Positions 2,594 to 10,478 of a stretch of DNA of 64,000 nt are shown here, one piece after another (positions within the stretch are counted from its first letter, which is position 1; each line of letters begins with the position of its first letter). Under the pieces are notes generated by a model. The model was not told the origin of the DNA, did no database searches, and worked only from the letters and a program-made list of their open reading frames with translations. The stretch spans positions 1 to 64,000 of the IMG/VR virus record IMGVR_UViG_3300050821_002957. One strand, written 5' to 3'. Both the position numbers and the translations under genes were made by a program.

Positions 2594-3112
2594 ATGTCCC
2601 CAAAGACTGACATGTTCGGAACGCCGGTCATCGATTCATTTCGTGACGACTATCGTTTCCTCAGCAATTTTTATGTTGCACCTGTCTCTCTTTGGGGAAT
2701 TAACTTTCCTTCGTCCGAACATGCCTATCAATGGGCCAAGACAGATGACGAGCTTGAAAAGAAGTTCGTACTCTTCAAGCAGCTTCCGCATGTCCAGGGA
2801 TATCGTGTTATCTCGACTTCTCCCGGCCAAGCGAAGCGTGTAGGTAAGACAGTAACAAAACGTGAAGACTGGGATTTGATTCGTCCTGGCATCATGTTGG
2901 AAATTTTGAGAGCCAAGTTTAGTCAGAATCCCGATCTCAAAGAATTACTCCTGGCGACCGGCGATGCAATTCTCATTGAAGGCAACACATGGCACGACAA
3001 CGACTGGGGCCACTGTACGTGTGAGAACTGCATTACCAAGAAAAAATCCAATATGCTTGGTGCTCTGCTTATGCAGGTTCGAGAAGAATTACAAAATGAA
3101 AGACAAGACTAA
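2594..3112 (+). CDS. NADAR family (YbiA-like) N-glycosidase / ADP-ribosyl hydrolase
   Basis: FLSNFY, FPSSEHAYQWAK, KFSQNPDLKELLLATGDAILIEGN-W-D-WG, NMLGALLMQVR motifs. Confidence 0.9.
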   Translation: MSPKTDMFGTPVIDSFRDDYRFLSNFYVAPVSLWGINFPSSEHAYQWAKTDDELEKKFVLFKQLPHVQGYRVISTSPGQAKRVGKTVTKREDWDLIRPGIMLEILRAKFSQNPDLKELLLATGDAILIEGNTWHDNDWGHCTCENCITKKKSNMLGALLMQVREELQNERQD

Positions 3113-3663: not shown

Positions 3664-3756
3664 GGTGGCGTGGTGTATGGTTGCACAGCCTGCCTTATAA
3701 GCAGGGTCGCACTAGATGAGTGCCCGGACTGAGTTCAATTCTCAGCGCCACTACCA
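3664..3756 (+). tRNA. tRNA with UAU (Ile) anticodon and long variable arm, 93 nt
   Basis: Acceptor GGTGGCG/CGCCACT-A-CCA; D stem GTGT/GCAC; CCTGC-CT TAT AA-GCAGG; V stem GCACT/AGTGC; T arm CTGAG-TTCAATT-CTCAG. Confidence 0.85.
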
Positions 3757-3763
3757 AAATTTT

Positions 3764-4327
3764 ATGACATCTCTTGAAAAAGCAGGACAAGCAAAGAACC
3801 TTCTCATTGGCATCGCAGAGAAACTGACGGTGCCTGCGCTGACAGATGCCTGCAAGGTCGTTCTGTACGATCCAACCTTCGTGACGCAATACGGCTCGTC
3901 TGGAAAGCACCACAGCTATCCTGGTGGCTTGGCGATGCATACTCTCGAAGTGACTCAGTTTGCCTTGAAGATGGCCGAGATGCTTCCGATGGCCGATACT
4001 GACGTGGTTGCGACGGCGGCAATTTTTCACGACTACACGAAGATCAAGGAATACGCACCAGCAGCACAATTTGGTGATGGTGGATCGGTACGCCATACCA
4101 ACTATCGAAAATTCATTCGTCACGTTGCCGGAAGTCACGCTGCATTCATGATCGCCATCGAAGGAAAACGAGTGCCGGAAGAAAAGGTGTTCCGCATCGA
4201 GCACGCAATCCTGGCACATCATGGTTCGATTGCAGCAGGAAGTCCGATAGATATGGCGCTCATTGAAGCCTACATCGTGCATTACGCAGATTCATTCAGT
4301 GCAAAATTTGGTCCATCGAAAGGATAA
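3764..4327 (+). CDS. HD-domain hydrolase, YhaM/CBF1-like (no OB fold)
   Basis: HHSYPGGLAMHTLEV, FHDYTK, HAILAHHG, IVHYADSFSA; start moved to 3764 because track ATG 3716 lies inside the tRNA. Confidence 0.85.
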   Translation: MTSLEKAGQAKNLLIGIAEKLTVPALTDACKVVLYDPTFVTQYGSSGKHHSYPGGLAMHTLEVTQFALKMAEMLPMADTDVVATAAIFHDYTKIKEYAPAAQFGDGGSVRHTNYRKFIRHVAGSHAAFMIAIEGKRVPEEKVFRIEHAILAHHGSIAAGSPIDMALIEAYIVHYADSFSAKFGPSKG

Positions 4328-4328
4328 A

Positions 4329-4808
4329 ATGTTACTCGACACAATCAACACTCACATTACCGAAGCAATGAAGGCAAAGGATGGTCCACGTCTGACGACA
4401 CTCCGTGCAATCAAGGTGAAGATTGACGCCTTCATGAAAGAACGCATCAATCGAGTCGAAGTGACCGAGGCTAACGAACAGAAGATCCTGGAGAACCTCG
4501 TCAAGCAGCGCCTTGACTCAATTGAACTGTTCGAGAAAGGCAAGCGTTTGGATTTGGTTGCAATTGAAAGAGCCGAACTTGCGCTCATCAAAAGCTACAT
4601 GCCAAAGGATGCGACCGGCGTAGAGATCGACGCTGCAATTGAACTAGCATTACCGGGACTGCTTTCGACGGGTCCCAAGGCAATTGGTATGGTCATGGCC
4701 GATGTCAAAAAGAGATTGGCTGGCAAACGAGTGGATGGAAAGATTCTCTCAGAAAAAATCAAGGCTCGTTTCGTTGTCGCTGAAGCGAACGGTGAGACAT
4801 TCCATTGA
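4329..4808 (+). CDS. yqeY: GatB/YqeY domain protein
   Basis: EAMKAKD..RLTTLRAIK, KQRLDSIELFEKGKRLDL...E.AELALIKSYMP, IGMVM..VK..LAGKRVDG. Confidence 0.88.
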   Translation: MLLDTINTHITEAMKAKDGPRLTTLRAIKVKIDAFMKERINRVEVTEANEQKILENLVKQRLDSIELFEKGKRLDLVAIERAELALIKSYMPKDATGVEIDAAIELALPGLLSTGPKAIGMVMADVKKRLAGKRVDGKILSEKIKARFVVAEANGETFH

Positions 4809-4996
4809 TCGACTGGAAAAGTCTTGGCCTGAAAAAACCTCAGAAAAGAGCCTCTAGCAATCGTGACTCTAATTCGAGACTTCAGGTCAAGTGCATCTGT
4901 GGTCACAAGCAGTTTGAACATGAGTGTCATCCAGACGAACATTGTTACAAATGTGAATGCCGACAATTCAAGAGGTCCCGTCGTCCAACTGGATAG
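4805..4996 (+). CDS. Small Cys/His-rich protein; 3' end overlaps tRNA-Arg(CCG)
   Basis: CICGH..EH.C...HC..CEC pattern; TTG start. Confidence 0.55.
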   Translation: MIDWKSLGLKKPQKRASSNRDSNSRLQVKCICGHKQFEHECHPDEHCYKCECRQFKRSRRPTG

Positions 4997-5049
4997 GACG
5001 CTACCCTCCGAAGGTTGAAATAGTGGTTCAAATCCACTCGGGACTACCA
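4974..5049 (+). tRNA. trnR: tRNA-Arg(CCG)
   Basis: GGTCCCG/CGGGACT-A-CCA; CTACC-CT CCG AA-GGTTG; AGTGG-TTCAAAT-CCACT. Confidence 0.93.
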
Positions 5050-5062
5050 TCTAGATATTGAC

Positions 5063-5251
5063 ATGAATCTGAATGACAAACCAATTAGCGTCACTGGCTC
5101 TGCCAATCCTGTAATCACTCGTGAAGAATATTATAAACGTCGTGAAAAATCTTCTAGCTACATGCCCGGATTAAAGAAAGGCGATCTCCCAAAGCGTATC
5201 AGGACAGCGGAAGATGATATTGCCGACATGCTTTTTGATCTAACAGAATGA
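5063..5251 (+). CDS. Hypothetical protein
   Basis: 62 aa; ATGA overlap with next ORF. Confidence 0.55.
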   Translation: MNLNDKPISVTGSANPVITREEYYKRREKSSSYMPGLKKGDLPKRIRTAEDDIADMLFDLTE

Positions 5252-5586
5252 CCCAAAAAGAACGACAAGCCATATTTGACGTAGTAGGTCAGGAAGCCGA
5301 TTTCCAAAAAATCTCAGGTTCCAATTTTGAAGTCGCTCTCAAGGAATGGTTTGATGATACTGAGAAACCATTCCCGCCCTATATTACAGACATTATCGTC
5401 CAGGTAATTGTTCAGTTAGCCAAGAAACCGCAATTTGAACACTATAAACTCGACGGAGATGTAGCTTTAAGAGCATTTGAACGGGCACTAAAACGAAGAC
5501 CATTTCGTATGATGGAAAATCCCTTTCCGGCTTTGACGAGAGTCGTCTTCGACAGTTTCATACGGCAGATACAACTAAAAAGATAG
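5248..5586 (+). CDS. Hypothetical protein
   Basis: 112 aa ORF. Confidence 0.65.
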   Translation: MTQKERQAIFDVVGQEADFQKISGSNFEVALKEWFDDTEKPFPPYITDIIVQVIVQLAKKPQFEHYKLDGDVALRAFERALKRRPFRMMENPFPALTRVVFDSFIRQIQLKR

Positions 5587-5636
5587 CTCTGCTATATACC
5601 TGTAGAAGTCGAATCTAATCTTCGACCTAGAGGAAT

Positions 5637-5999
5637 ATGAGCAAAGAAAAAGTACAAGACGACAAAATTTTGTTGCGTCTGCCGTCCACTCTGACATCGG
5701 CAGTTGATCAAGTTATTAGAGAGCAAATCCCAGAGTTAAACCGCTCGGAATTCATCCGCAGGGCAGTTCGTTTTACGCTGGATCATGTCGAAGAATTCAA
5801 GACCAGTGATGCGGCGACCGTTCACGAAAAAACAGAAGTCGAGAGTGTTGCAAAGATCAATGCTGTCCGTGACCTTCGTGACCAATTACTACAATACAAG
5901 GATCTGTTGCAGAAGGAACCACAGACTCCAAACACCATCAAACAACTTTCGTTTTTGATCTTTTTGATCGGCGAAATGATCTTTAAGATGAACGATTAA
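5637..5999 (+). CDS. Ribbon-helix-helix (CopG/Arc-like) DNA-binding protein
   Basis: ILLRLPSTLTSAVDQVI...LNRSEFIRRAVRF; AGAGGA SD. Confidence 0.75.
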   Translation: MSKEKVQDDKILLRLPSTLTSAVDQVIREQIPELNRSEFIRRAVRFTLDHVEEFKTSDAATVHEKTEVESVAKINAVRDLRDQLLQYKDLLQKEPQTPNTIKQLSFLIFLIGEMIFKMND

Positions 6000-6026
6000 T
6001 AAACCGACGCTTGTATACATATTTGC

Positions 6027-6662
6027 ATGGAACAAAAACCGTGCCAAGTGTATTACTGTTACAAAACAACCAACATCATAAATGGAAAGGTTTACATTGG
6101 GTTCGCCAGTGATCCCAAAACTCGCTGGCGAAATCATAGAAGAGACGCTGAAACAGGTCGAGGATTTGCCCTCGCCGCCGCAATCCGAAAGTATGGATGG
6201 GACGCATTTGAATTTGAAGTGCTCTGTTGTGGTAAAGACAAGCGTATGATGTTGGAACACGTCGAGCCTGCATTGATTGAACAATATCAAAGTCGCATTG
6301 AACAAAATGGCTACAATGTAACTCGGGGCGGCGAACACATCCCGGTAGGCAATCGAGGTGGCTCTAAAAAAGGTCGTATTGTTTCTGAAGAATCTCGATG
6401 TAAAATGAGTGCTGCTAAGAAAGGCAATGTTAATGGAGCAGGTAACAAAGGCCATAAACATTCCGATGAAACTAAACAAAAAATGGCAGCAGTCCATCTG
6501 GGTCATTTCGTTTCTGAAGAGACACGCAAGAAAATCGGTAATCGTTATCCTCGCACAGAAGAAGAAAAGCAACACCTAAGCAAAATAAATACGGGCCGAA
6601 AACATTCAGAAGAAACCAAACAGAAGATGGCAGCGACAAGACGAGCAATGAGGATTTTGTGA
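6027..6662 (+). CDS. GIY-YIG homing endonuclease with NUMOD3 repeats (Seg-like)
   Basis: YCYKTTNIINGKVYIG; repeated HS(D/E)ETKQKM. Confidence 0.9.
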   Translation: MEQKPCQVYYCYKTTNIINGKVYIGFASDPKTRWRNHRRDAETGRGFALAAAIRKYGWDAFEFEVLCCGKDKRMMLEHVEPALIEQYQSRIEQNGYNVTRGGEHIPVGNRGGSKKGRIVSEESRCKMSAAKKGNVNGAGNKGHKHSDETKQKMAAVHLGHFVSEETRKKIGNRYPRTEEEKQHLSKINTGRKHSEETKQKMAATRRAMRIL

Positions 6663-6663
6663 C

Positions 6664-6876
6664 GTGTGGAAGTACATCAAGGCACTCTTTACCCATCGGC
6701 CAAAATTCTATCGAGGCACCACAGATAAATTTTGCCACAGCCTTACCGCAAAGGGCAGGCGCATTCGTATTTTCGGATTCGCCTGGGGACCTTTTATGAT
6801 TGCATTCCATACACTCGACTTGACAAATAGCAGACCTTCTGTAAAATACAAAGGGTACTCCAATGAAGCTGACTGA
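6664..6876 (+). CDS. Hypothetical protein
   Basis: 70 aa, GTG start 1 nt after upstream stop. Confidence 0.5.
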   Translation: MWKYIKALFTHRPKFYRGTTDKFCHSLTAKGRRIRIFGFAWGPFMIAFHTLDLTNSRPSVKYKGYSNEAD

Positions 6877-7047
6877 AATGGAAAAGAAAATTTTGTTCGA
6901 TGCAATAACACTGTACAAAAACAGAGCAGAGACGATGTTGATACTACCATCTCGGCACTTCGTAGCAAATTGAAACGTGCTCTGGCTGAAGGAACCAACA
7001 GCACCGGCCCAAGATGATCTATTTGGTTGGAATGCGAAAATAATACC

Positions 7048-7075
7048 TTGACATCCTGATCCAATGTGGTATTCT
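7048..7075 (+). promoter_or_regulatory. sigma70-like promoter upstream of tRNA array
   Basis: TTGACA-16 nt-TATTCT preceded by TGTGG, same layout as 2561..2588. Confidence 0.6.
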
Positions 7076-7083
7076 TAGAACAT

Positions 7084-7156
7084 CAGAGGCGAAGTGCTCT
7101 GTTGAAGGGATCTTGGTTCATCCATGACCCTGCGTAGATAGAGCACTTCGCTGCTG
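7084..7156 (+). ncRNA. Candidate structured RNA / 5' leader hairpin
   Basis: Perfect 12 bp GCGAAGTGCTCT (7089-7100)/AGAGCACTTCGC (7140-7151) with inner AGGG/CCCT and TGG/CCA stems; no ORF. Confidence 0.45.
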
Positions 7157-7164
7157 TATAAATA
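7157..7164 (+). promoter_or_regulatory. T4-type late promoter
   Basis: Exact TATAAATA 17 nt before the leader ATG. Confidence 0.7.
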
Positions 7165-7181
7165 GAAACGAGAACACAGTC

Positions 7182-7229
7182 ATGAGACGAATTACCATTA
7201 CACGCCGAGAGGTTAAACGAAAGCGGTAG
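7182..7229 (+). CDS. Putative leader peptide MRRITITRREVKRKR (15 aa)
   Basis: ATG...TAG immediately downstream of late promoter; stop overlaps 5' arm of a hairpin. Confidence 0.5.
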   Translation: MRRITITRREVKRKR

Positions 7230-7273
7230 CGACAAGCTAACGCTCTAGTGCATTGGTGTTTCGTCGCTGCCGC
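7223..7273 (+). terminator. Hairpin (possible attenuator or processing stem) before first array tRNA
   Basis: GCGGTAGCGAC (7223-7233) pairs with GTCGCTGCCGC (7263-7273), followed by CTTT. Confidence 0.5.
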
Positions 7274-7291
7274 CTTTACAGTTTCCAACAT

Positions 7292-7368
7292 GGATCTGTA
7301 ACTCAAACGGACAGAGTAACCGTCTTTTAAACGGAAGGCTGTGGGATCGTACCCCACCAGATCCACCA
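7292..7368 (+). tRNA. trnK: tRNA-Lys(UUU)
   Basis: GGATCTG/CAGATCC-A-CCA; CT TTT AA loop; atypical T loop ATCGTAC. Confidence 0.92.
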
Positions 7369-7390
7369 AATTTTTCAGTTTTACCCATGT

Positions 7391-7467
7391 GGTCTCGTAG
7401 CTCAATGGATTAGAGTACTTCGCTACGAACGAAGGGGTTGCAGGTTCGAGTCCTGCCGAGACTACCA
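7391..7467 (+). tRNA. trnR: tRNA-Arg(ACG)
   Basis: GGTCTCG/CGAGACT-A-CCA; CTTCG-CT ACG AA-CGAAG. Confidence 0.95.
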
Positions 7468-7477
7468 CAATTTTTGC

Positions 7478-7551
7478 TGGCGATTAGTTCAAAGGTAGAA
7501 CCCCTGGCTGATTACCGGGAGACAAGAGTTCGATTCTCTTATCGCCTACCA
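7478..7551 (+). tRNA. Atypical tRNA with GAU (Ile) anticodon
   Basis: TGGCGAT/ATCGCCT-A-CCA (1:72 T:T); CCTGG-CT GAT TA-CCGGG (T37); AAGAG-TTCGATT-CTCTT. Confidence 0.8.
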
Positions 7552-7999
7552 TTTCGTCATGAATTTCACCATGACAGTTGGAACAGACAAGTATGCATTT
7601 GTTTAATTCGATTTTGATGTCTGACCATGATTTACCGCTGTTGTTTGAGATAGTGAAATCTTTTTGTGACGGATCTGTATGATGAAAATCCAGAGACCGA
7701 AGACATCGATTGTAACCACAGCGAGCACAGGAGCCGCCCAAATATTCTACGGCTTTTGCTTTGATATTTTGCCGACGTTTTTTGACTGATTGATAAGACG
7801 TTATAGTTCGAGGCCGACGAGGAACATGTTTAGCGCAATATGATCGTTTGCTACTGACCGGACTATTGCAAATTTGACATCGCCATTTTGTCCGATATTC
7901 TGTGAAACAATTTCGAGAACAGAATGGATTTGTTGGTTCGATAGATTTAGTTTTTTTGCGGTTGAAGTCTATACCGCAGTGCGTACACCTAAAGGTCAT
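7484..7999 (-). CDS. HNH endonuclease inserted antisense in tRNA array
   Basis: CARCGYNRC..SLDFHH.DP..K...CILVCSNCHGEIH; N-terminal Zn fingers; last codons antisense to tRNA 7478..7551. Confidence 0.88.
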   Translation of the reverse strand: MTFRCTHCGIDFNRKKTKSIEPTNPFCSRNCFTEYRTKWRCQICNSPVSSKRSYCAKHVPRRPRTITSYQSVKKRRQNIKAKAVEYLGGSCARCGYNRCLRSLDFHHTDPSQKDFTISNNSGKSWSDIKIELNKCILVCSNCHGEIHDEMVGDKRIELLSPGNQPGVLPLN

Positions 8000-8004
8000 A
8001 TGAC

Positions 8005-8011
8005 TATTTAG
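8005..8011 (-). promoter_or_regulatory. Late promoter CTAAATA
   Basis: 5 nt upstream of HNH ATG. Confidence 0.7.
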
Positions 8012-8036
8012 GATTAGCGCAATGTTAAGGGTTTGC

Positions 8037-8111
8037 GTCCCTGTAGCTCAACGGATAGAGCACTTGCCTTCTAAGCTCGGGATCTAGGTTCGATTCCTAG
8101 CAGGGATACCA
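8037..8111 (+). tRNA. trnR: tRNA-Arg(UCU)
   Basis: GTCCCTG/CAGGGAT-A-CCA; CTTGC-CT TCT AA-GCTCG (two stem mismatches). Confidence 0.9.
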
Positions 8112-8114
8112 TTT

Positions 8115-8188
8115 AGCCGCATAGCTCAACCCGGTAGAGCGTCTGCCTTACATGCAGAGGGTTCTCAGTTCAACTCTGAGTGTGGCTA
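8115..8188 (+). tRNA. trnV: tRNA-Val(UAC), CCA not encoded (TCA)
   Basis: AGCCGCA/TGTGGCT-A; TCTGC-CT TAC AT-GCAGA; CTCAG-TTCAACT-CTGAG. Confidence 0.9.
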
Positions 8189-8221
8189 TCAAATTTTAAG
8201 TAATAGGAAGAAGTAAAGAAA

Positions 8222-8404
8222 GTGATTTGTAGAGTATGTGGCGAAGAATTTTCGCCCGGAAGTAAACACCCAGGATACATTAATGTATGCCTGCAAGAAG
8301 AATGCAGAGAGACTGCTCGTGAACCTCTGGTGAGGCCGTTGGTATTGACAACTACGGTGAGCGTCCTGTATGATTCTGAAATAGAGACAAGTTTGGACTG
8401 GTAA
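8222..8404 (+). CDS. Small Zn-finger-like hypothetical protein
   Basis: CRVC...C..EEC; GTG start; ends inside tRNA-Lys(CUU). Confidence 0.45.
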   Translation: MICRVCGEEFSPGSKHPGYINVCLQEECRETAREPLVRPLVLTTTVSVLYDSEIETSLDW

Positions 8405-8469
8405 CTCAATGGTAGAGTAACTGGCTCTTAACCAGTAAGTTGTGGGTTCGAGTCCCACCCGGTCCACCA
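8395..8469 (+). tRNA. trnK: tRNA-Lys(CUU)
   Basis: GGACTGG/CCGGTCC-A-CCA; ACTGG-CT CTT AA-CCAGT. Confidence 0.95.
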
Positions 8470-8492
8470 AATTTTGTAGAGGACAAAAAGCA

Positions 8493-9156
8493 ATGCCCAT
8501 CGTAGAAATAAGAGCCGCCGAAGGTGGTCTCGACGCAAAGCTGTTAGTAGATGATCAATTCACGATCTATCTAAAGCTGGCAGAGCGGAGGGGTCTTTGA
8601 GGTTGAGATAACTGAAAAGACTGAAGGATTCGTCGCATTTGTTGTGAGTGGTGACAAAGCCGAAGCAACGTTTGCAAATGAAGCAGGCGGTCATCGCTGG
8701 CAAAGAGTCCCGCCAACCGAACGCAAAGGAAGAATTCAGACAAGCACAATCACGGTTGCTGTCTTGCCTGAACCCCAAGCCGAAGAATTCAAGATTGACG
8801 AAAAGGATCTTGAATGGAGCACAACCATCAGTCAAGGTAAAGGTGGACAGTCGGTCAACACAACTTACTCTTGTGTCATCCTAAAACACAAGCCATCTGG
8901 TGAAACCGTTCGTTGTCAAAATGAGCGATCACAGTTGCGAAACAAGCAGACCGCATTGCGAGTGCTGCGATCACGTCTTCTGGCGCAAAAAGAAAACGCA
9001 GAGCACGCCAGCGAGTCAAAACAACGCAAAGATCAAATTGGTTCGGGTCAGCGTGGAGACAAACGCCGCACGATTCGAGTGAAAGATGGTCAAGTCAATG
9101 ATCATGTGACTGGGCAAAAATGGTCCCTGAAGAAGTACTTGAATGGGGACTGGTAA
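8493..9156 (+). CDS. Class I peptide chain release factor homolog (RF1-type PxT, GGQ) expressed by +1 frameshift at CTT-TGA 8595-8600; about 220 aa
   Basis: Frame 0 MPIVEIRAAEGGLDAK...ERRGL-stop; +1 frame EVEITEK...HRWQRVPPTERKGRIQTS...GKGGQSVN...RTIRVKDGQVNDH. Confidence 0.88.
8587..8601 (+). other. prfB-type programmed +1 frameshift cassette
   Basis: GGAGG-GGT-CTT-TGA-G: internal SD 3 nt before CTT TGA. Confidence 0.88.
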
Positions 9157-9271
9157 AAGCATTTTGTCTAGTCCCGTCCTCTATTTCTTTATCGCACTTA
9201 AGACAGATCGGCACCCCATTTACGTACAGACATGTTTCAGATTTGTGGCAGCGAACACATTCAGTTTTCAT
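9095..9271 (-). CDS. Small CxxC/CxxC protein (58 aa, not in track), convergent with release factor
   Basis: MKTECVRCHKSETCLYVNGVPICLKCDKEIED...; about 40 nt downstream of a minus-strand promoter. Confidence 0.55.
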   Translation of the reverse strand: MKTECVRCHKSETCLYVNGVPICLKCDKEIEDGTRQNAFTSPHSSTSSGTIFAQSHDH

Positions 9272-9311
9272 AAAACACTTTTTGATAGTTTTGATTTAGC
9301 TTCTACACAAA

Positions 9312-9340
9312 ATCTTACAAAACTTCTAAAAAAGTGTCAA
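9312..9340 (-). promoter_or_regulatory. sigma70 promoter pointing toward release factor and tRNA array
   Basis: Minus strand TTGACA-17 nt-TAAGAT with A-rich upstream tract. Confidence 0.7.
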
Positions 9341-9376
9341 TACTCTTTTTGGCTAGGTATGTGATATACTACTTGT

Positions 9377-9452
9377 GGGTCCATCGTCTAACGGGATAGG
9401 GCACTTGTTTCCTAAACTTGAAGTCCAGGTTCGAGTCCTGGTGGGCCTACCA
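9377..9452 (+). tRNA. trnR: tRNA-Arg(CCU)
   Basis: GGGTCCA/TGGGCCT-A-CCA; CTTGT-TT CCT AA-ACTTG (two T:T mismatches). Confidence 0.9.
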
Positions 9453-9531: not shown

Positions 9532-9987
9532 ATGAGTTGCTGGAACTACGACGAATTCAAAGCAGAGTTGAAAAGAATCGATCTCGATGTTCCGACTCCT
9601 GAGAAAAAAGCCAGTGGCTATAACAGAGTCGAGTACGGCGGATTGACGCTGATCAACAATAAGCCTGCGTTCGTCAATTCGTGGCACGTTGGTGGATCAT
9701 CAGGAGCCGGATATTGGGGCGATGAGGATCTTCACAGCTATGTTACCGGCGAGCCAGAACCAGAATGGGCCGACCTGACGAAAGTTTTGGAGCACTTCTG
9801 TCCAAGCATTACTTTTTTGAAATATAAGAAGCTGATGACCATCACCAAGTCAGATTCATGGAGCCGAAACGACTACTACGGTAATGAAACGAACTATTCA
9901 TATCGATACGTTTTTGTCGAAAACTTGTTTAGATTTTTGAACGACGACGGACTCATCGAACGAGAAATGGTGGATGACTCAGAATGA
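9532..9987 (+). CDS. Hypothetical protein
   Basis: 151 aa; ATGA overlap with next ORF. Confidence 0.7.
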   Translation: MSCWNYDEFKAELKRIDLDVPTPEKKASGYNRVEYGGLTLINNKPAFVNSWHVGGSSGAGYWGDEDLHSYVTGEPEPEWADLTKVLEHFCPSITFLKYKKLMTITKSDSWSRNDYYGNETNYSYRYVFVENLFRFLNDDGLIEREMVDDSE

Positions 9988-10478
9988 GCGAAGTAATCAT
10001 GATTGTAGGTCTGCCGGGTTCCGGGAAGACCACCTATGCTAGAAAGTTGATTCAAGAAATCAATTTCGCAAAAATTCTTTTCGATGATCCAGGTACTTGT
10101 CGCAAAGGACTTGACGCACTCGAAGAATGGATTGAAGACGGCGAGAATGCTGTAGTGACCGATGTCTACGGCATAACCACAGCAAAGCGCACCGAAATAC
10201 TTGACGCTCTCATTTCCTGGGGCGCAACCAAAATCACCTGGATCTTCTTTGAGAACAATCCAGAAGCGTGCATCCGAAATATCAAACGCCGTAACGAAAA
10301 AGACCCAAATTATCGGGTAGTTGCTGATGTCACAGTGCGGGAGCTTTCTCTTCTTTACCAGATCCCGGACGGTGCCACAGTCATTCCAGTCTATTCGCCA
10401 GTGGTCGATGTAAATATCAAAGGTGAATCTTTCACAGAACAGGATCTCATCGATGCAGGGCAGGATTGGGGCGAATGA
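9984..10478 (+). CDS. P-loop kinase (AAA_33 / polynucleotide-kinase-like)
   Basis: VIMIVGLPGSGKTT Walker A; ACIRNIKRR lid-like motif. Confidence 0.75.
   Translation: MSEVIMIVGLPGSGKTTYARKLIQEINFAKILFDDPGTCRKGLDALEEWIEDGENAVVTDVYGITTAKRTEILDALISWGATKITWIFFENNPEACIRNIKRRNEKDPNYRVVADVTVRELSLLYQIPDGATVIPVYSPVVDVNIKGESFTEQDLIDAGQDWGE

What the first reader, a model, noticed from the sequence alone, without database searches (positions are those of the whole stretch)
8493..9156. Phage RF1-type release factor gated by a prfB-style +1 frameshift at a UGA codon
Seen: a 35-codon ORF with the RF motif EIRAAEGG ends in GGAGG-GGT-CTT-TGA, and the +1 frame continues directly into the rest of a class I RF (QRVPPT...GGQ). 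The ORF track shows only the second half. Known: E. coli prfB uses an internal SD 3 nt before CUU-UGA so RF2 autoregulates, and PxT marks RF1 (UAA/UAG) specificity whereas RF2 has SPF. Inference: a PxT factor should not read its own UGA, so this would be cross-sensing rather than autoregulation. The phage would make a shortened RF (no domain 1) when host RF2 is scarce or inhibited, either as a spare terminator or as a rescue factor.
Basis: partly seen in the sequence, partly recalled or inferred. Interest (0 to 1): 0.92.

Follow-up and report, generated by a model that had tools for sequence, protein, structure and literature searches.

The report
Frameshift-gated short release factor in phage
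A huge phage encodes a shortened RF1-type translation-termination factor that can only be made if the ribosome slips +1 at an internal CUU-UGA, the trick so far known only from the bacterial RF2 gene. The same stop-codon gate is conserved in about a hundred related genes of phages and bacteria.

Summary
Window 8493-8600 is a 35-codon ORF (start of the RF decoding domain) ending GGAGG-GGT-CTT-TGA. The +1 frame (8599-9156, 185 codons) carries the rest of a class I release factor: QRVPPTE and GGQ, best match RF1, no domain 1.

It is not an assembly error. Two independent assemblies keep the 19-nt cassette exactly. Of 140 related loci (75 viral, 65 bacterial), 98 need the same +1 shift. CTT-T is invariant in all 97 cleanly parsed sites. 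An SD-like core ends exactly 3 nt before CTT in 57 of 90 distinct contexts.

- The family is not phage-specific; many Myxococcota chromosomes and bacterial tRNA arrays carry it.
- The gate stop is TGA in 68 loci, TAG in 29 and TAA in 1. It switches at least 19 times on the tree with no matching change in the PPT motif.
- The gate sits at three or more different places in the gene. In 34 loci it is replaced by in-frame TGA(s).

A stop-codon gate is therefore the conserved feature. It most likely couples synthesis of a spare, RF3-independent terminator to poor termination. Whether this is RF2 cross-sensing or autoregulation is unresolved. I found no description of this in the literature.

The parts
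8345..8374 (+). Promoter-like site (TTGACA-18-TATGAT, 11 of 12) upstream of tRNA-Lys and the RF gene. It may drive a tRNA-RF co-transcript.
   Evidence: This is a consensus match only; 6 sites found against 4.2 expected in the region.
8395..8469 (+). tRNA-Lys(CTT), immediately upstream. The RF gene lies inside a tRNA array of 9 tRNAs between 3664 and 9452.
8478..8483 (+). Ribosome-binding site AGAGGA, 9 nt before the ATG.
   Evidence: Read from the sequence; inference.
8493..8600 (+). ORF0: 35 sense codons plus TGA. It encodes strand beta1 and helix alpha5 of the RF decoding domain (EIRAAEGG.DA, the element that reads U1 of a stop codon in RF1).
   Evidence: The alignment to E. coli RF1 residues 113 onward is. 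The model of continuous homologue P0058 has E2-9 and H12-31.
8587..8591 (+). Internal Shine-Dalgarno-like GGAGG, 3 nt upstream of CTT, the same spacing as in prfB.
   Evidence: The family logo shows a core ending 3 nt before CTT in 57 of 90 contexts. The rare codons CGG-AGG are used.
8595..8601 (+). Shift site CTT-TGA-G. P-site tRNA-Leu slips from CUU to UUU, and decoding resumes at GAG 8599-8601.
   Evidence: CTT-T is invariant in 97 parsed sites. The predicted junction ...RRGL|E... matches continuous homologues (ARRGLSFEI in P0058, RKGLELEL in L101).
8604..8624 (+). Three further 0-frame TGA codons (8604, 8613, 8622) that end any 0-frame readthrough.
   Evidence: Read from the sequence.
8599..9156 (+). 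+1 ORF, 185 codons plus TAA. It holds the rest of the decoding domain (HRWQRVPPTE..GRIQTS), the GGQ domain and the C-terminal part. The predicted full product is 220 aa.
8710..8718 (+). PPT tripeptide, at the PxT position of RF1.
   Evidence: It is the same in all 66 viral loci where the motif parsed.
8842..8850 (+). GGQ peptidyl-tRNA hydrolysis motif.

Best explanation
Window 8493-9156 is one gene of a huge tailed phage. It encodes a 220-aa class I release factor of RF1 type that lacks the N-terminal domain 1.

The full protein is made only when a ribosome, with tRNA-Leu on CUU (8595-8597) in the P site and UGA (8598-8600) in the A site, slips +1. An internal SD (GGAGG, 3 nt upstream) pairing with 16S rRNA helps the slip, exactly as in prfB.

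Slipping competes with termination at that UGA. Output should therefore rise when UGA termination is slow, that is when host RF2 is scarce, busy or inhibited, and fall when it is efficient.

The product keeps the RF1 decoding residues and GGQ, so it most likely releases peptides at UAA and UAG, without the RF3/L11-contacting domain. UAA and UAG end 59 of 72 ORFs in this window.

In short, it is a termination-stress-gated spare terminator carried in the phage's tRNA/translation module.

Shown: the anatomy, the conservation of the gate, and the family and fold assignment. Inferred: frameshifting itself, its dependence on RF2, and the factor's activity and codon specificity.
For: Anatomy and register of the two pieces:
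- Both pieces align in register to RF1.
- The gene sits in a myophage with sheath, portal and TerL, which uses the standard code.

Conservation of the gate:
- 98 of 140 related loci, at 40-60% aa identity, need the same +1 shift.
- CTT-T is invariant in all 97 parsed sites.
- The base after the stop is C in 77% of distinct contexts.
- An SD core lies at spacing 3 in 57 of 90 contexts.
- Independent assemblies keep the cassette exactly.
- The chance expectation of the pattern in the window is 0.04.
- The rare codons CGG-AGG build the SD.
- Continuous relatives lack the RR(G/S) codons at this place.
- Only 6 of the 120 best database homologues are continuous ORFs.
- The gate recurs at three or more different positions, or as in-frame TGA, so the gate itself is under selection.
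- TAA, the stop read by both RFs, is used once in 98.

Family and fold:
- The ranking is RF1 > RF2 > PrfH by NCBIfam (194, 125 and 70 bits) and by PDB sequence search (1e-42, 1e-25 and 1e-11).
- A model of continuous member P0058 (pLDDT 84) matches ribosome-bound RF1 best (TM 0.69, E 1e-20).
- Domain-1-less RF1 is reported active in vitro and functional in vivo (Mora et al., as cited in PMC1586002).

Context:
- The window's stops are TAA 45, TAG 14 and TGA 13.
- The gene sits in tRNA arrays, often next to tmRNA, in phage relatives.
Against: - No experiment shows frameshifting here or its response to RF2.
- The window's stop context is UGA-G, not the UGA-C of prfB and of most relatives.
- A third of relatives use UAG at the gate, and stop identity flips often without any covarying residue. 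RF2 sensing is therefore not the conserved logic.
- In GC-rich Myxococcota, where UAA is probably rare (general knowledge, not measured here), an RF1-type spare gated by UGA would relieve RF2 little.
- The family also occurs in TAG-suppressing phages, where UAG-reading activity would seem counterproductive.
- The window protein has Gln in place of the RF1 His193 equivalent (GRIQTS) and Asp for Glu119, so its specificity may differ from RF1.
Confidence: 0.55

Rival explanations
1. True autoregulation. The PPT factor itself acts on ribosomes paused at the gate, whatever the stop (UGA, UAG). It would do so either because its specificity is broadened or because it releases any slowly terminating complex. 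Its own abundance would then shut the gate, as RF2 does in prfB.
For: - The gate stop varies (TGA 68, TAG 29) and switches at least 19 times with no change in the decoding motif. A single feedback logic covering both stops is the more economical reading.
- In-frame UGA versions occur in standard-code bacteria (Cupriavidus plasmid, Variovorax).
- The family is present in TAG-suppressing phages with UGA gates.
- The family departs from RF1 at His193 (Gln in about a third) and Glu119 (Asp).
Against: - Every residue known to set RF1 specificity (Gln181, Pro184, Thr186 and Thr194 equivalents) is retained.
- By the tripeptide rule, a PxT factor does not read UGA.
- The family scores much higher against RF1 than against RF2.
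Confidence: 0.2
2. Constitutive attenuator. The site simply sets a low, fixed yield of an RF that is harmful in excess, or a fixed ratio of the 35-aa peptide to full-length protein. It has no sensing role.
For: - RF overproduction is toxic, and the prfB frameshift limits that toxicity (PMC12421855).
- 14 of 90 contexts have no SD-like stimulator, which suggests that low efficiency is tolerated.
Against: - Weak promoters or RBSs would do the same job.
- A stop-dependent gate re-evolved at three or more positions and by two mechanisms.
- UAA is avoided (1 of 98).
- These points suggest a device meant to respond to termination rate.
- The ORF0 peptide is an integral strand and helix of the decoding domain, not a separate product.
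Confidence: 0.15
3. Modulator of decoding rather than a terminator. The domain-1-less factor occupies A sites at stop codons to compete with host RFs or suppressor tRNAs, for example as part of a phage code-switch module.
For: - Relatives lie beside suppressor tRNA(CTA) and tmRNA in TAG-recoded huge phages.
- Phage RFs have been proposed as code-change machinery (bioRxiv 10.1101/2021.08.26.457843).
Against: - GGQ and its surroundings are conserved, which argues for catalysis.
- The window phage uses the standard code and shows no suppressor tRNA in 64 kb.
- Chromosomal copies in Myxococcota have no such context.
Confidence: 0.07
4. Artefact or pseudogene: a 1-nt indel in a T-run from sequencing or assembly, or a decaying gene.
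For: - The site contains a TTT run.
- One bacterial locus (L128, Nannocystis pusilla) has a different frame pattern that could be homopolymer error.
Against: - The identical cassette is found in independent assemblies.
- 98 loci share the +1 requirement with invariant CTT-T and an upstream SD.
- Both halves are under protein-level conservation.
Confidence: 0.02

Closest known systems
prfB (RF2) programmed +1 frameshift
   Same: SD-like element 3 nt upstream, a CUU slippery codon, an in-frame UGA, a +1 shift, and location early in a release-factor gene. The competition between termination and slippage gives a built-in sensor of termination rate.
   Different: - The gene is RF1-type (PPT, not SPF) and lacks domain 1.
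- The site lies in the decoding domain (codon 36, equivalent to about residue 144 of E. coli RF1), not at codon 26 in domain 1. It therefore looks like an independent origin; the codon-26 position is general knowledge.
- The stop is UAG in about 30% of relatives, which a survey of over 12,000 prfB genes did not find (PMC12421855).
- The window has G, not C, after the stop.
- By the tripeptide rule the product should not read its own UGA.
RF1 (prfA)
   Same: Best sequence and fold match over domains 2-4. The Gln181, PxT and Thr194 equivalents and GGQ are kept.
   Different: - Domain 1 and the last ~35-40 residues of RF1 are absent.
- The score is far below the equivalog cut-offs (189-194 against 400-423 bits).
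- PPT is fixed; Asp replaces Glu119; Gln replaces His193 in the window protein.
- prfA genes are reported to have no programmed frameshift (PMC12421855).
PrfH / RFH
   Same: A class I RF paralogue without domain 1, of accessory and sporadic distribution.
   Different: - The similarity is much weaker (70 bits against a cut-off of 167; PDB E 1e-11).
- There is no RtcB partner gene in the window or in 65 bacterial loci.
- The decoding loop is RF1-like, not PrfH-like.
Phage-encoded RF1/RF2 and RF-1 genes in tRNA arrays
   Same: Release factors have been listed in huge phages (PMC7162821), in recoded phages as code-change genes, and in Mycobacterium tRNA arrays beside Pth and tmRNA (PMC5966550). 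The window's gene is also in a tRNA array.
   Different: None of these reports mentions a frameshift or an in-frame stop gate. Published huge-phage genomes do carry it unannotated: LR745208 has the +1 site, and LR745206, LR756501 and LR756504 have in-frame TGA.
ArfA back-up logic (analogy only, from general knowledge)
   Same: A rescue factor made only when the primary system (tmRNA) fails. The gate here would make a spare RF only when termination fails.
   Different: A different protein and a different mechanism (non-stop mRNA truncation versus a stop-codon frameshift).

Membership tests
Class I bacterial release factor superfamily | RF-1 domain (PF00472) with the GGQ motif | tested here: met
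   PF00472 scores 104.7 bits against a cut-off of 35. GGQ lies at 8842-8850.
Class I bacterial release factor superfamily | PCRF decoding domain (PF03462) | tested here: met
   The domain is split over the two frames. ORF0 matches profile 103-134 (22 bits, just under the cut-off of 24). The +1 piece matches 153-194 (43 bits).
RF1 (prfA equivalog) | NCBIfam equivalog score at or above the cut-off | tested here: not met
   NF001859 scores 194.5 against 400 and TIGR00019 scores 189.4 against 423. The pieces were searched apart and the protein is truncated relative to RF1.
RF1 (prfA equivalog) | PxT tripeptide with flanking Gln and Thr decoding residues | tested here: met
   The sequence is HRWQRVPPTE..GRIQTS. 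It aligns to RF1 HRVQRVPATE..GRIHTS. The His193 equivalent is Gln in the window.
RF1 (prfA equivalog) | N-terminal domain 1 (RF3/L11 contact) | tested here: not met
   The match starts at RF1 residue ~113. tRNA-Lys lies 24 nt upstream of the ATG, leaving no room for domain 1. The model has no such domain.
RF1 (prfA equivalog) | Peptide release at UAA and UAG only | not testable with these tools
   Needs in vitro release assays.
RF2 (prfB) | SPF tripeptide and TIGR00020 score at or above the cut-off | tested here: not met
   The tripeptide is PPT, not SPF. The score is 124.7 against 370.
prfB-type programmed +1 frameshift site | CUU followed by an in-frame UGA, with the +1 frame open and homologous downstream | tested here: met
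prfB-type programmed +1 frameshift site | SD-like sequence 3 nt upstream of CUU | tested here: met
   GGAGG lies at 8587-8591. The same spacing is found in 57 of 90 family contexts.
prfB-type programmed +1 frameshift site | Weak stop context (C after UGA) | tested here: not met
   The window has UGA-G. C follows the stop in 77% of family contexts.
prfB-type programmed +1 frameshift site | Conservation of the cassette among diverged homologues | tested here: met
   98 of 140 loci carry it, and CTT-T is invariant.
prfB-type programmed +1 frameshift site | Autoregulation: the product reads the gate's stop codon | tested here: inconclusive
   The PxT-type motif predicts no UGA reading. However, the gate stop varies between TGA and TAG without motif covariation. 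This needs biochemistry.
PrfH / RFH | TIGR03072 score at or above the cut-off | tested here: not met
   70.5 against 166.65.
PrfH / RFH | Operon with RtcB upstream | tested here: not met
   No RtcB lies near the gene in the window. No gene neighbour is conserved across 65 bacterial loci.
ArfB | GGQ domain plus a C-terminal tail, with no decoding domain | tested here: not met
   32.6 bits against a cut-off of 100, over the GGQ region only. A decoding domain is present.

The most novel reading that the evidence does not exclude
The PPT family would be a previously unrecognised back-up termination system shared by huge phages, tRNA-array mobile elements and Myxococcota. It would be a domain-1-less, RF3-independent release factor whose synthesis is switched on by failure of termination itself.

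The switch would be a stop-codon gate that has evolved repeatedly. It appears as +1 frameshifting at CUU-UGA or CUU-UAG at three or more sites, or as in-frame UGA readthrough.

Such a factor would let the carrier survive depletion or trapping of the host RFs, for example by RF-trapping peptides, toxins or phage-host conflict. It would also be the first RF1-type gene with programmed recoding.
Probability: 0.3. Interest if true: 0.9.

Novelty: new variant of a known kind. Interest (0 to 1): 0.8.

Why it matters
prfB has stood for decades as the single release-factor gene with programmed frameshifting. A 2025 survey of more than 12,000 genomes states that RF1 genes show none and that UAG is never the gate codon.

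Here an RF1-type paralogue carries the same cassette. It arose at a different place in the protein and is conserved in about a hundred phage and bacterial loci. It has UAG versions, alternative positions and readthrough versions.

This matters in three ways:
- It gives a natural comparative series for what makes CUU-stop sites shift.
- It makes a specific idea testable: cells and phages sense termination capacity and respond with a spare, RF3-independent factor.
- It shows that gene callers systematically truncate this family. 114 of the 120 best database homologues are partial ORFs, and the copies in published huge-phage genomes are unannotated.

Tried and rejected
- **Code 4 (TGA = Trp) as the explanation for relatives with in-frame TGA.** Rejected. 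Flanking genes of those low-GC loci use TGG and have almost no in-frame TGA, but do have in-frame TAG and a tRNA(CTA). Some carriers are standard-code bacteria.
- **Covariation of the tripeptide, or of any column, with the gate's stop codon.** None was found. PPT is fixed in the viral loci. The raw associations lie in the C-terminal part, and nothing reaches significance in phylogenetically independent pairs, although only 5 well-supported pairs were available.
- **A conserved partner gene, as RtcB is for PrfH.** None was found across 65 bacterial loci. Neighbours in Nannocystis are uninformative, apart from ClpS downstream.
- **A known RNA element or a stimulatory downstream structure.** Rfam finds only tRNAs, and the fold z-score is -1.8.
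- **Gate stop versus GC content.** No clear link (p = 0.05; medians 0.50-0.53 viral and 0.68-0.70 bacterial).
- **Names or annotation for the family.** Cluster look-up gave only 'peptide chain release factor 1' from JGI. The plasmid search returned mostly canonical prfA. GenBank phage hits are unannotated metagenomic genomes.
- **A link between the low-GC clade and Lak phages.** Not supported.
- **Literature searches for a frameshifted RF1-like or phage RF.** Nothing was found. One search failed on syntax.

Full report
**Observation**

- ATG 8493 follows an AGAGGA ribosome-binding site and lies 24 nt after tRNA-Lys(CTT).
- It opens a 35-codon ORF, MPIVEIRAAEGG...AERRGL, that ends at TGA 8598-8600.
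- The last bases are GGAGG (8587-8591), GGT, CTT (8595-8597) and TGA.
- The +1 frame from GAG 8599 stays open for 185 codons to TAA 9154-9156. It contains HRWQRVPPTE (PPT at 8710-8718) and GGQ (8842-8850).

Searched apart, both pieces hit release-factor families in register.
- ORF0 matches RF1 profile positions 107-138 and the +1 piece matches 157-330.
- The ranking is RF1 (194 bits) > RF2 (125) > PrfH (70).
- Nothing upstream can encode domain 1, because a tRNA gene sits there.

Further checks on the cassette:
- Frame 0 beyond the TGA meets three more TGAs within 27 nt, so only the +1 path is productive.
- The pattern GGAGGNNNCTTTRA occurs once in 64 kb against 0.04 expected.
- Its Arg-Arg is written with the window's two rarest Arg codons, CGG (10%) and AGG (4%).

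**Not an error**

The window is the first 64 kb of a 405,631-bp IMG/VR contig. It is a myophage with tail sheath, portal and large terminase, and it uses the standard code.

An independent assembly (SRR7093796) is identical through the region. A diverged relative (SRR29270584, 83% aa identity) differs at many flanking synonymous positions yet keeps the 19-nt GAGCGGAGGGGTCTTTGAG exactly.

**Conservation of the gate**

A scan of viral contigs gave 75 related loci, and a scan of one genome per species gave 65.
- 98 of the 140 loci have the N-terminal EIRAAEGG segment in the frame that requires a +1 shift.
- In the 97 sites that parsed cleanly, the last 0-frame codon is CTT and the next base is T, without exception. 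L077 was misparsed and is also ...GL*.
- The stop is TGA in 68 loci, TAG in 29 and TAA in 1.
- The following base is C in 77% of 90 distinct contexts.
- An SD-like core (GGAGG, GGAG, GGGGG or AGGAG) ends exactly 3 nt before CTT in 57 of 90 contexts. 14 contexts have none.
- Continuous relatives lack the RR(G/S) codons at that place (for example NLMNF, KRNKL, KRKGL). The GGAGG is therefore selected as RNA, not as protein.
- The predicted junction (...RRGL|E/D/S...) equals the sequence of natural unshifted members (P0058 ARRGLSFEI; L101 RKGLELEL, sister to the shifted L102).
- Of the 120 best database homologues only 6 are continuous. The rest are truncated or +1-frame gene calls that read the cassette as ..SGGVF...

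(i) The family is not phage-specific.
- It is chromosomal in many Myxococcota: Minicystis rosea, Nannocystis species, Kofleriaceae, Haliangiales, Polyangiaceae and Pyxidicoccus.
- It also sits in large tRNA arrays of Thiobacillus denitrificans and of Chloroflexota and Acidobacteriota MAGs.
- Viral and bacterial copies interleave on the tree (21 changes).

(ii) The gate's stop codon is labile.
- There are at least 19 TGA/TAG switches.
- The window (TGA) groups with L002 and L009 (TAG) and with L003, L004 and L007 (TGA).
- The decoding motif is PPT in every viral locus where it parsed, whatever the stop.
- No protein column covaries with the stop after phylogenetic control.

(iii) The gate moves.
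- CTT-stop lies 31 codons after the EIRAAEGG motif in 84 loci, including the window.
- It lies at 41 codons in 6 loci, at 46-47 codons in 6 loci, and at 26 codons in one.

(iv) In 34 loci the frameshift is replaced by one or two in-frame TGA codons.
- This is not code 4. Carriers include a Cupriavidus plasmid and Variovorax.
- In the low-GC huge phages that have two TGAs, neighbouring genes use TGG and lack in-frame TGA. They do contain in-frame TAG and lie next to a tRNA(CTA) and often a tmRNA.
- Published huge-phage genomes carry these forms unannotated. LR745208 has the +1 site. LR745206, LR756501 (735 kb) and LR756504 have in-frame TGA.

The conserved feature is therefore an early stop-codon gate, reached by frameshifting or by readthrough. 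It almost always uses a stop read by only one host RF.

**The protein**

A natural continuous member (P0058) aligns to E. coli RF1 residues 113-321.
- The E-values are 1e-42 for RF1, 1e-25 for RF2 and 1e-11 for PrfH.
- The shift-site Leu falls on the Trp of RF1 ARRW|RVEI.
- Its AlphaFold model (pLDDT 84) matches ribosome-bound RF1 best (TM 0.69, E 1e-20).
- ORF0 encodes strand beta1 and helix alpha5. The N-terminus of that helix reads U1 of the stop codon in RF1, so the downstream ORF alone would lack part of the decoding site.

The residues that set RF1 specificity are kept (the Gln181, Pro184, Thr186 and Thr194 equivalents). Glu119 is Asp in the family, and His193 is Gln in the window protein and in about a third of relatives.

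Domain 1 is reported to be dispensable for codon-specific release in vitro and needed for RF3 coupling (PMC1586002, citing Mora et al.).

No partner gene is conserved, and there is no RtcB, so this is not PrfH.

In the window the gene lies in a tRNA array with homing endonucleases and YqeY, HD, NADAR and P-loop kinase genes.

**Mechanism**

Shown: the anatomy, its conservation, and the family and fold assignment.

Inferred from the well-studied prfB case (summarised in PMC12421855): with CUU in the P site and a slowly read stop in the A site, SD:anti-SD pairing 3 nt upstream promotes the slip of tRNA-Leu to UUU. The yield of full-length protein then falls as termination at the gate rises.

In the window the gate is UGA, so host RF2 should set the yield. 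The product, if RF1-like, would serve UAA and UAG, which end 59 of 72 ORFs here.

It cannot be the family's general logic, for three reasons.
- UAG gates are common.
- UGA-gated copies sit in Myxococcota, where UAA is probably rare.
- UGA-gated copies sit in TAG-suppressing phages.

The main rival is real autoregulation by a factor that acts on any slowly terminating ribosome. A fixed attenuator and a decoding modulator are lesser rivals. Only biochemistry can decide between them.

**Novelty**

Release factors have been listed in huge phages, in recoded phages and in tRNA arrays. None of those reports mentions a frameshift.

The 2025 prfB survey states that programmed frameshifting is shown for prfB but not prfA, and that TAG is not found as the gate codon. 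The 2013 GeneTack survey lists only prfB among RF genes. Reviews of RF evolution and of PrfH do not describe this.

Within the searchable literature this is therefore an undescribed variant of a known recoding device, in a new gene family. Absence from the library searched is not proof of absence elsewhere.

Noticed in passing
window 3664-9452: The window holds an array of 9 tRNA genes. They include four Arg isoacceptors (CCG, ACG, TCT, CCT) plus Lys(TTT, CTT), Ile(TAT, GAT) and Val(TAC). tRNA-Arg(CCG) at 4974-5049 and tRNA-Arg(CCT) at 9377-9452 read the rare CGG and AGG codons that form the gate's internal SD.
   Followed up: partly
window 3664-3756: tRNA-Ile(TAT) is called at 93 nt, unusually long. 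It overlaps the start of the HD-domain ORF at 3716-4327. It could contain an insert, or it could be a miscall.
   Followed up: no
window 6027-6662 (+) and 7484-7999 (-): A GIY-YIG/NUMOD3 homing endonuclease and a Cys-rich ORF with no Pfam hit (an HNH-like CxxC...H pattern) are interspersed among the tRNA genes.
   Followed up: partly
window 2594-3112, 3716-4327, 4263-4808, 9984-10478: NADAR, HD-domain, YqeY-like and AAA_33 P-loop kinase genes flank the RF gene. Together they may form a translation/RNA-handling module.
   Followed up: partly
L036, L040, L041, L043, L045, L047, L049, L057, L064, L107 (about 1.5-3.5 kb downstream of the RF gene): Low-GC huge-phage relatives carry a suppressor tRNA with anticodon CTA. 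Several also carry a tmRNA gene upstream. Their neighbouring genes contain in-frame TAG. Their RF gene instead carries two in-frame TGAs, or a CTT-TAG frameshift site.
   Followed up: partly
L146 (LR756501.1, 735 kb) and L147 (LR756504.1): In these published TAG-recoding huge phages the RF1 Gln181 equivalent is Ile (HCFIRVPPTE) or Asn (HCWNRVPPTE). Gln181 reads the third stop-codon base in RF1. These factors might therefore no longer read UAG and might be UAA-only.
   Followed up: no
L144 (LR745208.1, 485 kb): This frameshift-gated homologue has a shortened decoding loop (HRVQRTSNGRIHSS) with no PxT tripeptide.
   Followed up: no
L115, L122, L126, L135; also L027, L042, L051, L060, L068, L074: GC-rich members, from standard-code bacteria (Cupriavidus plasmid pTMH.W2_2, Variovorax sp. 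WDL1), from GC-rich bacterial MAGs and from viral contigs, have a single in-frame TGA at the gate position with no frame change. Expression would need UGA readthrough.
   Followed up: partly
L118 (Thiobacillus denitrificans DSM 12475), L123, L114: Here the RF gene sits inside arrays of 25-29 tRNA genes within 8.5 kb of a bacterial contig. These may be mobile tRNA-array units.
   Followed up: no
L128 (Nannocystis pusilla Na p29): The copy reads CTTGAC (no stop) at the gate and has a second frame change about 8 codons upstream. This could be homopolymer errors of a long-read assembly or a decaying copy. Five sister Nannocystis species keep CTT-TGA.
   Followed up: no
top 120 database homologues: In the wider family the tripeptide is not always PPT. 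The counts are PPN in 14, PVT in 4 and PAT in 2, plus single PET, PIT, PPP, PHN, PPS and PST.
   Followed up: no
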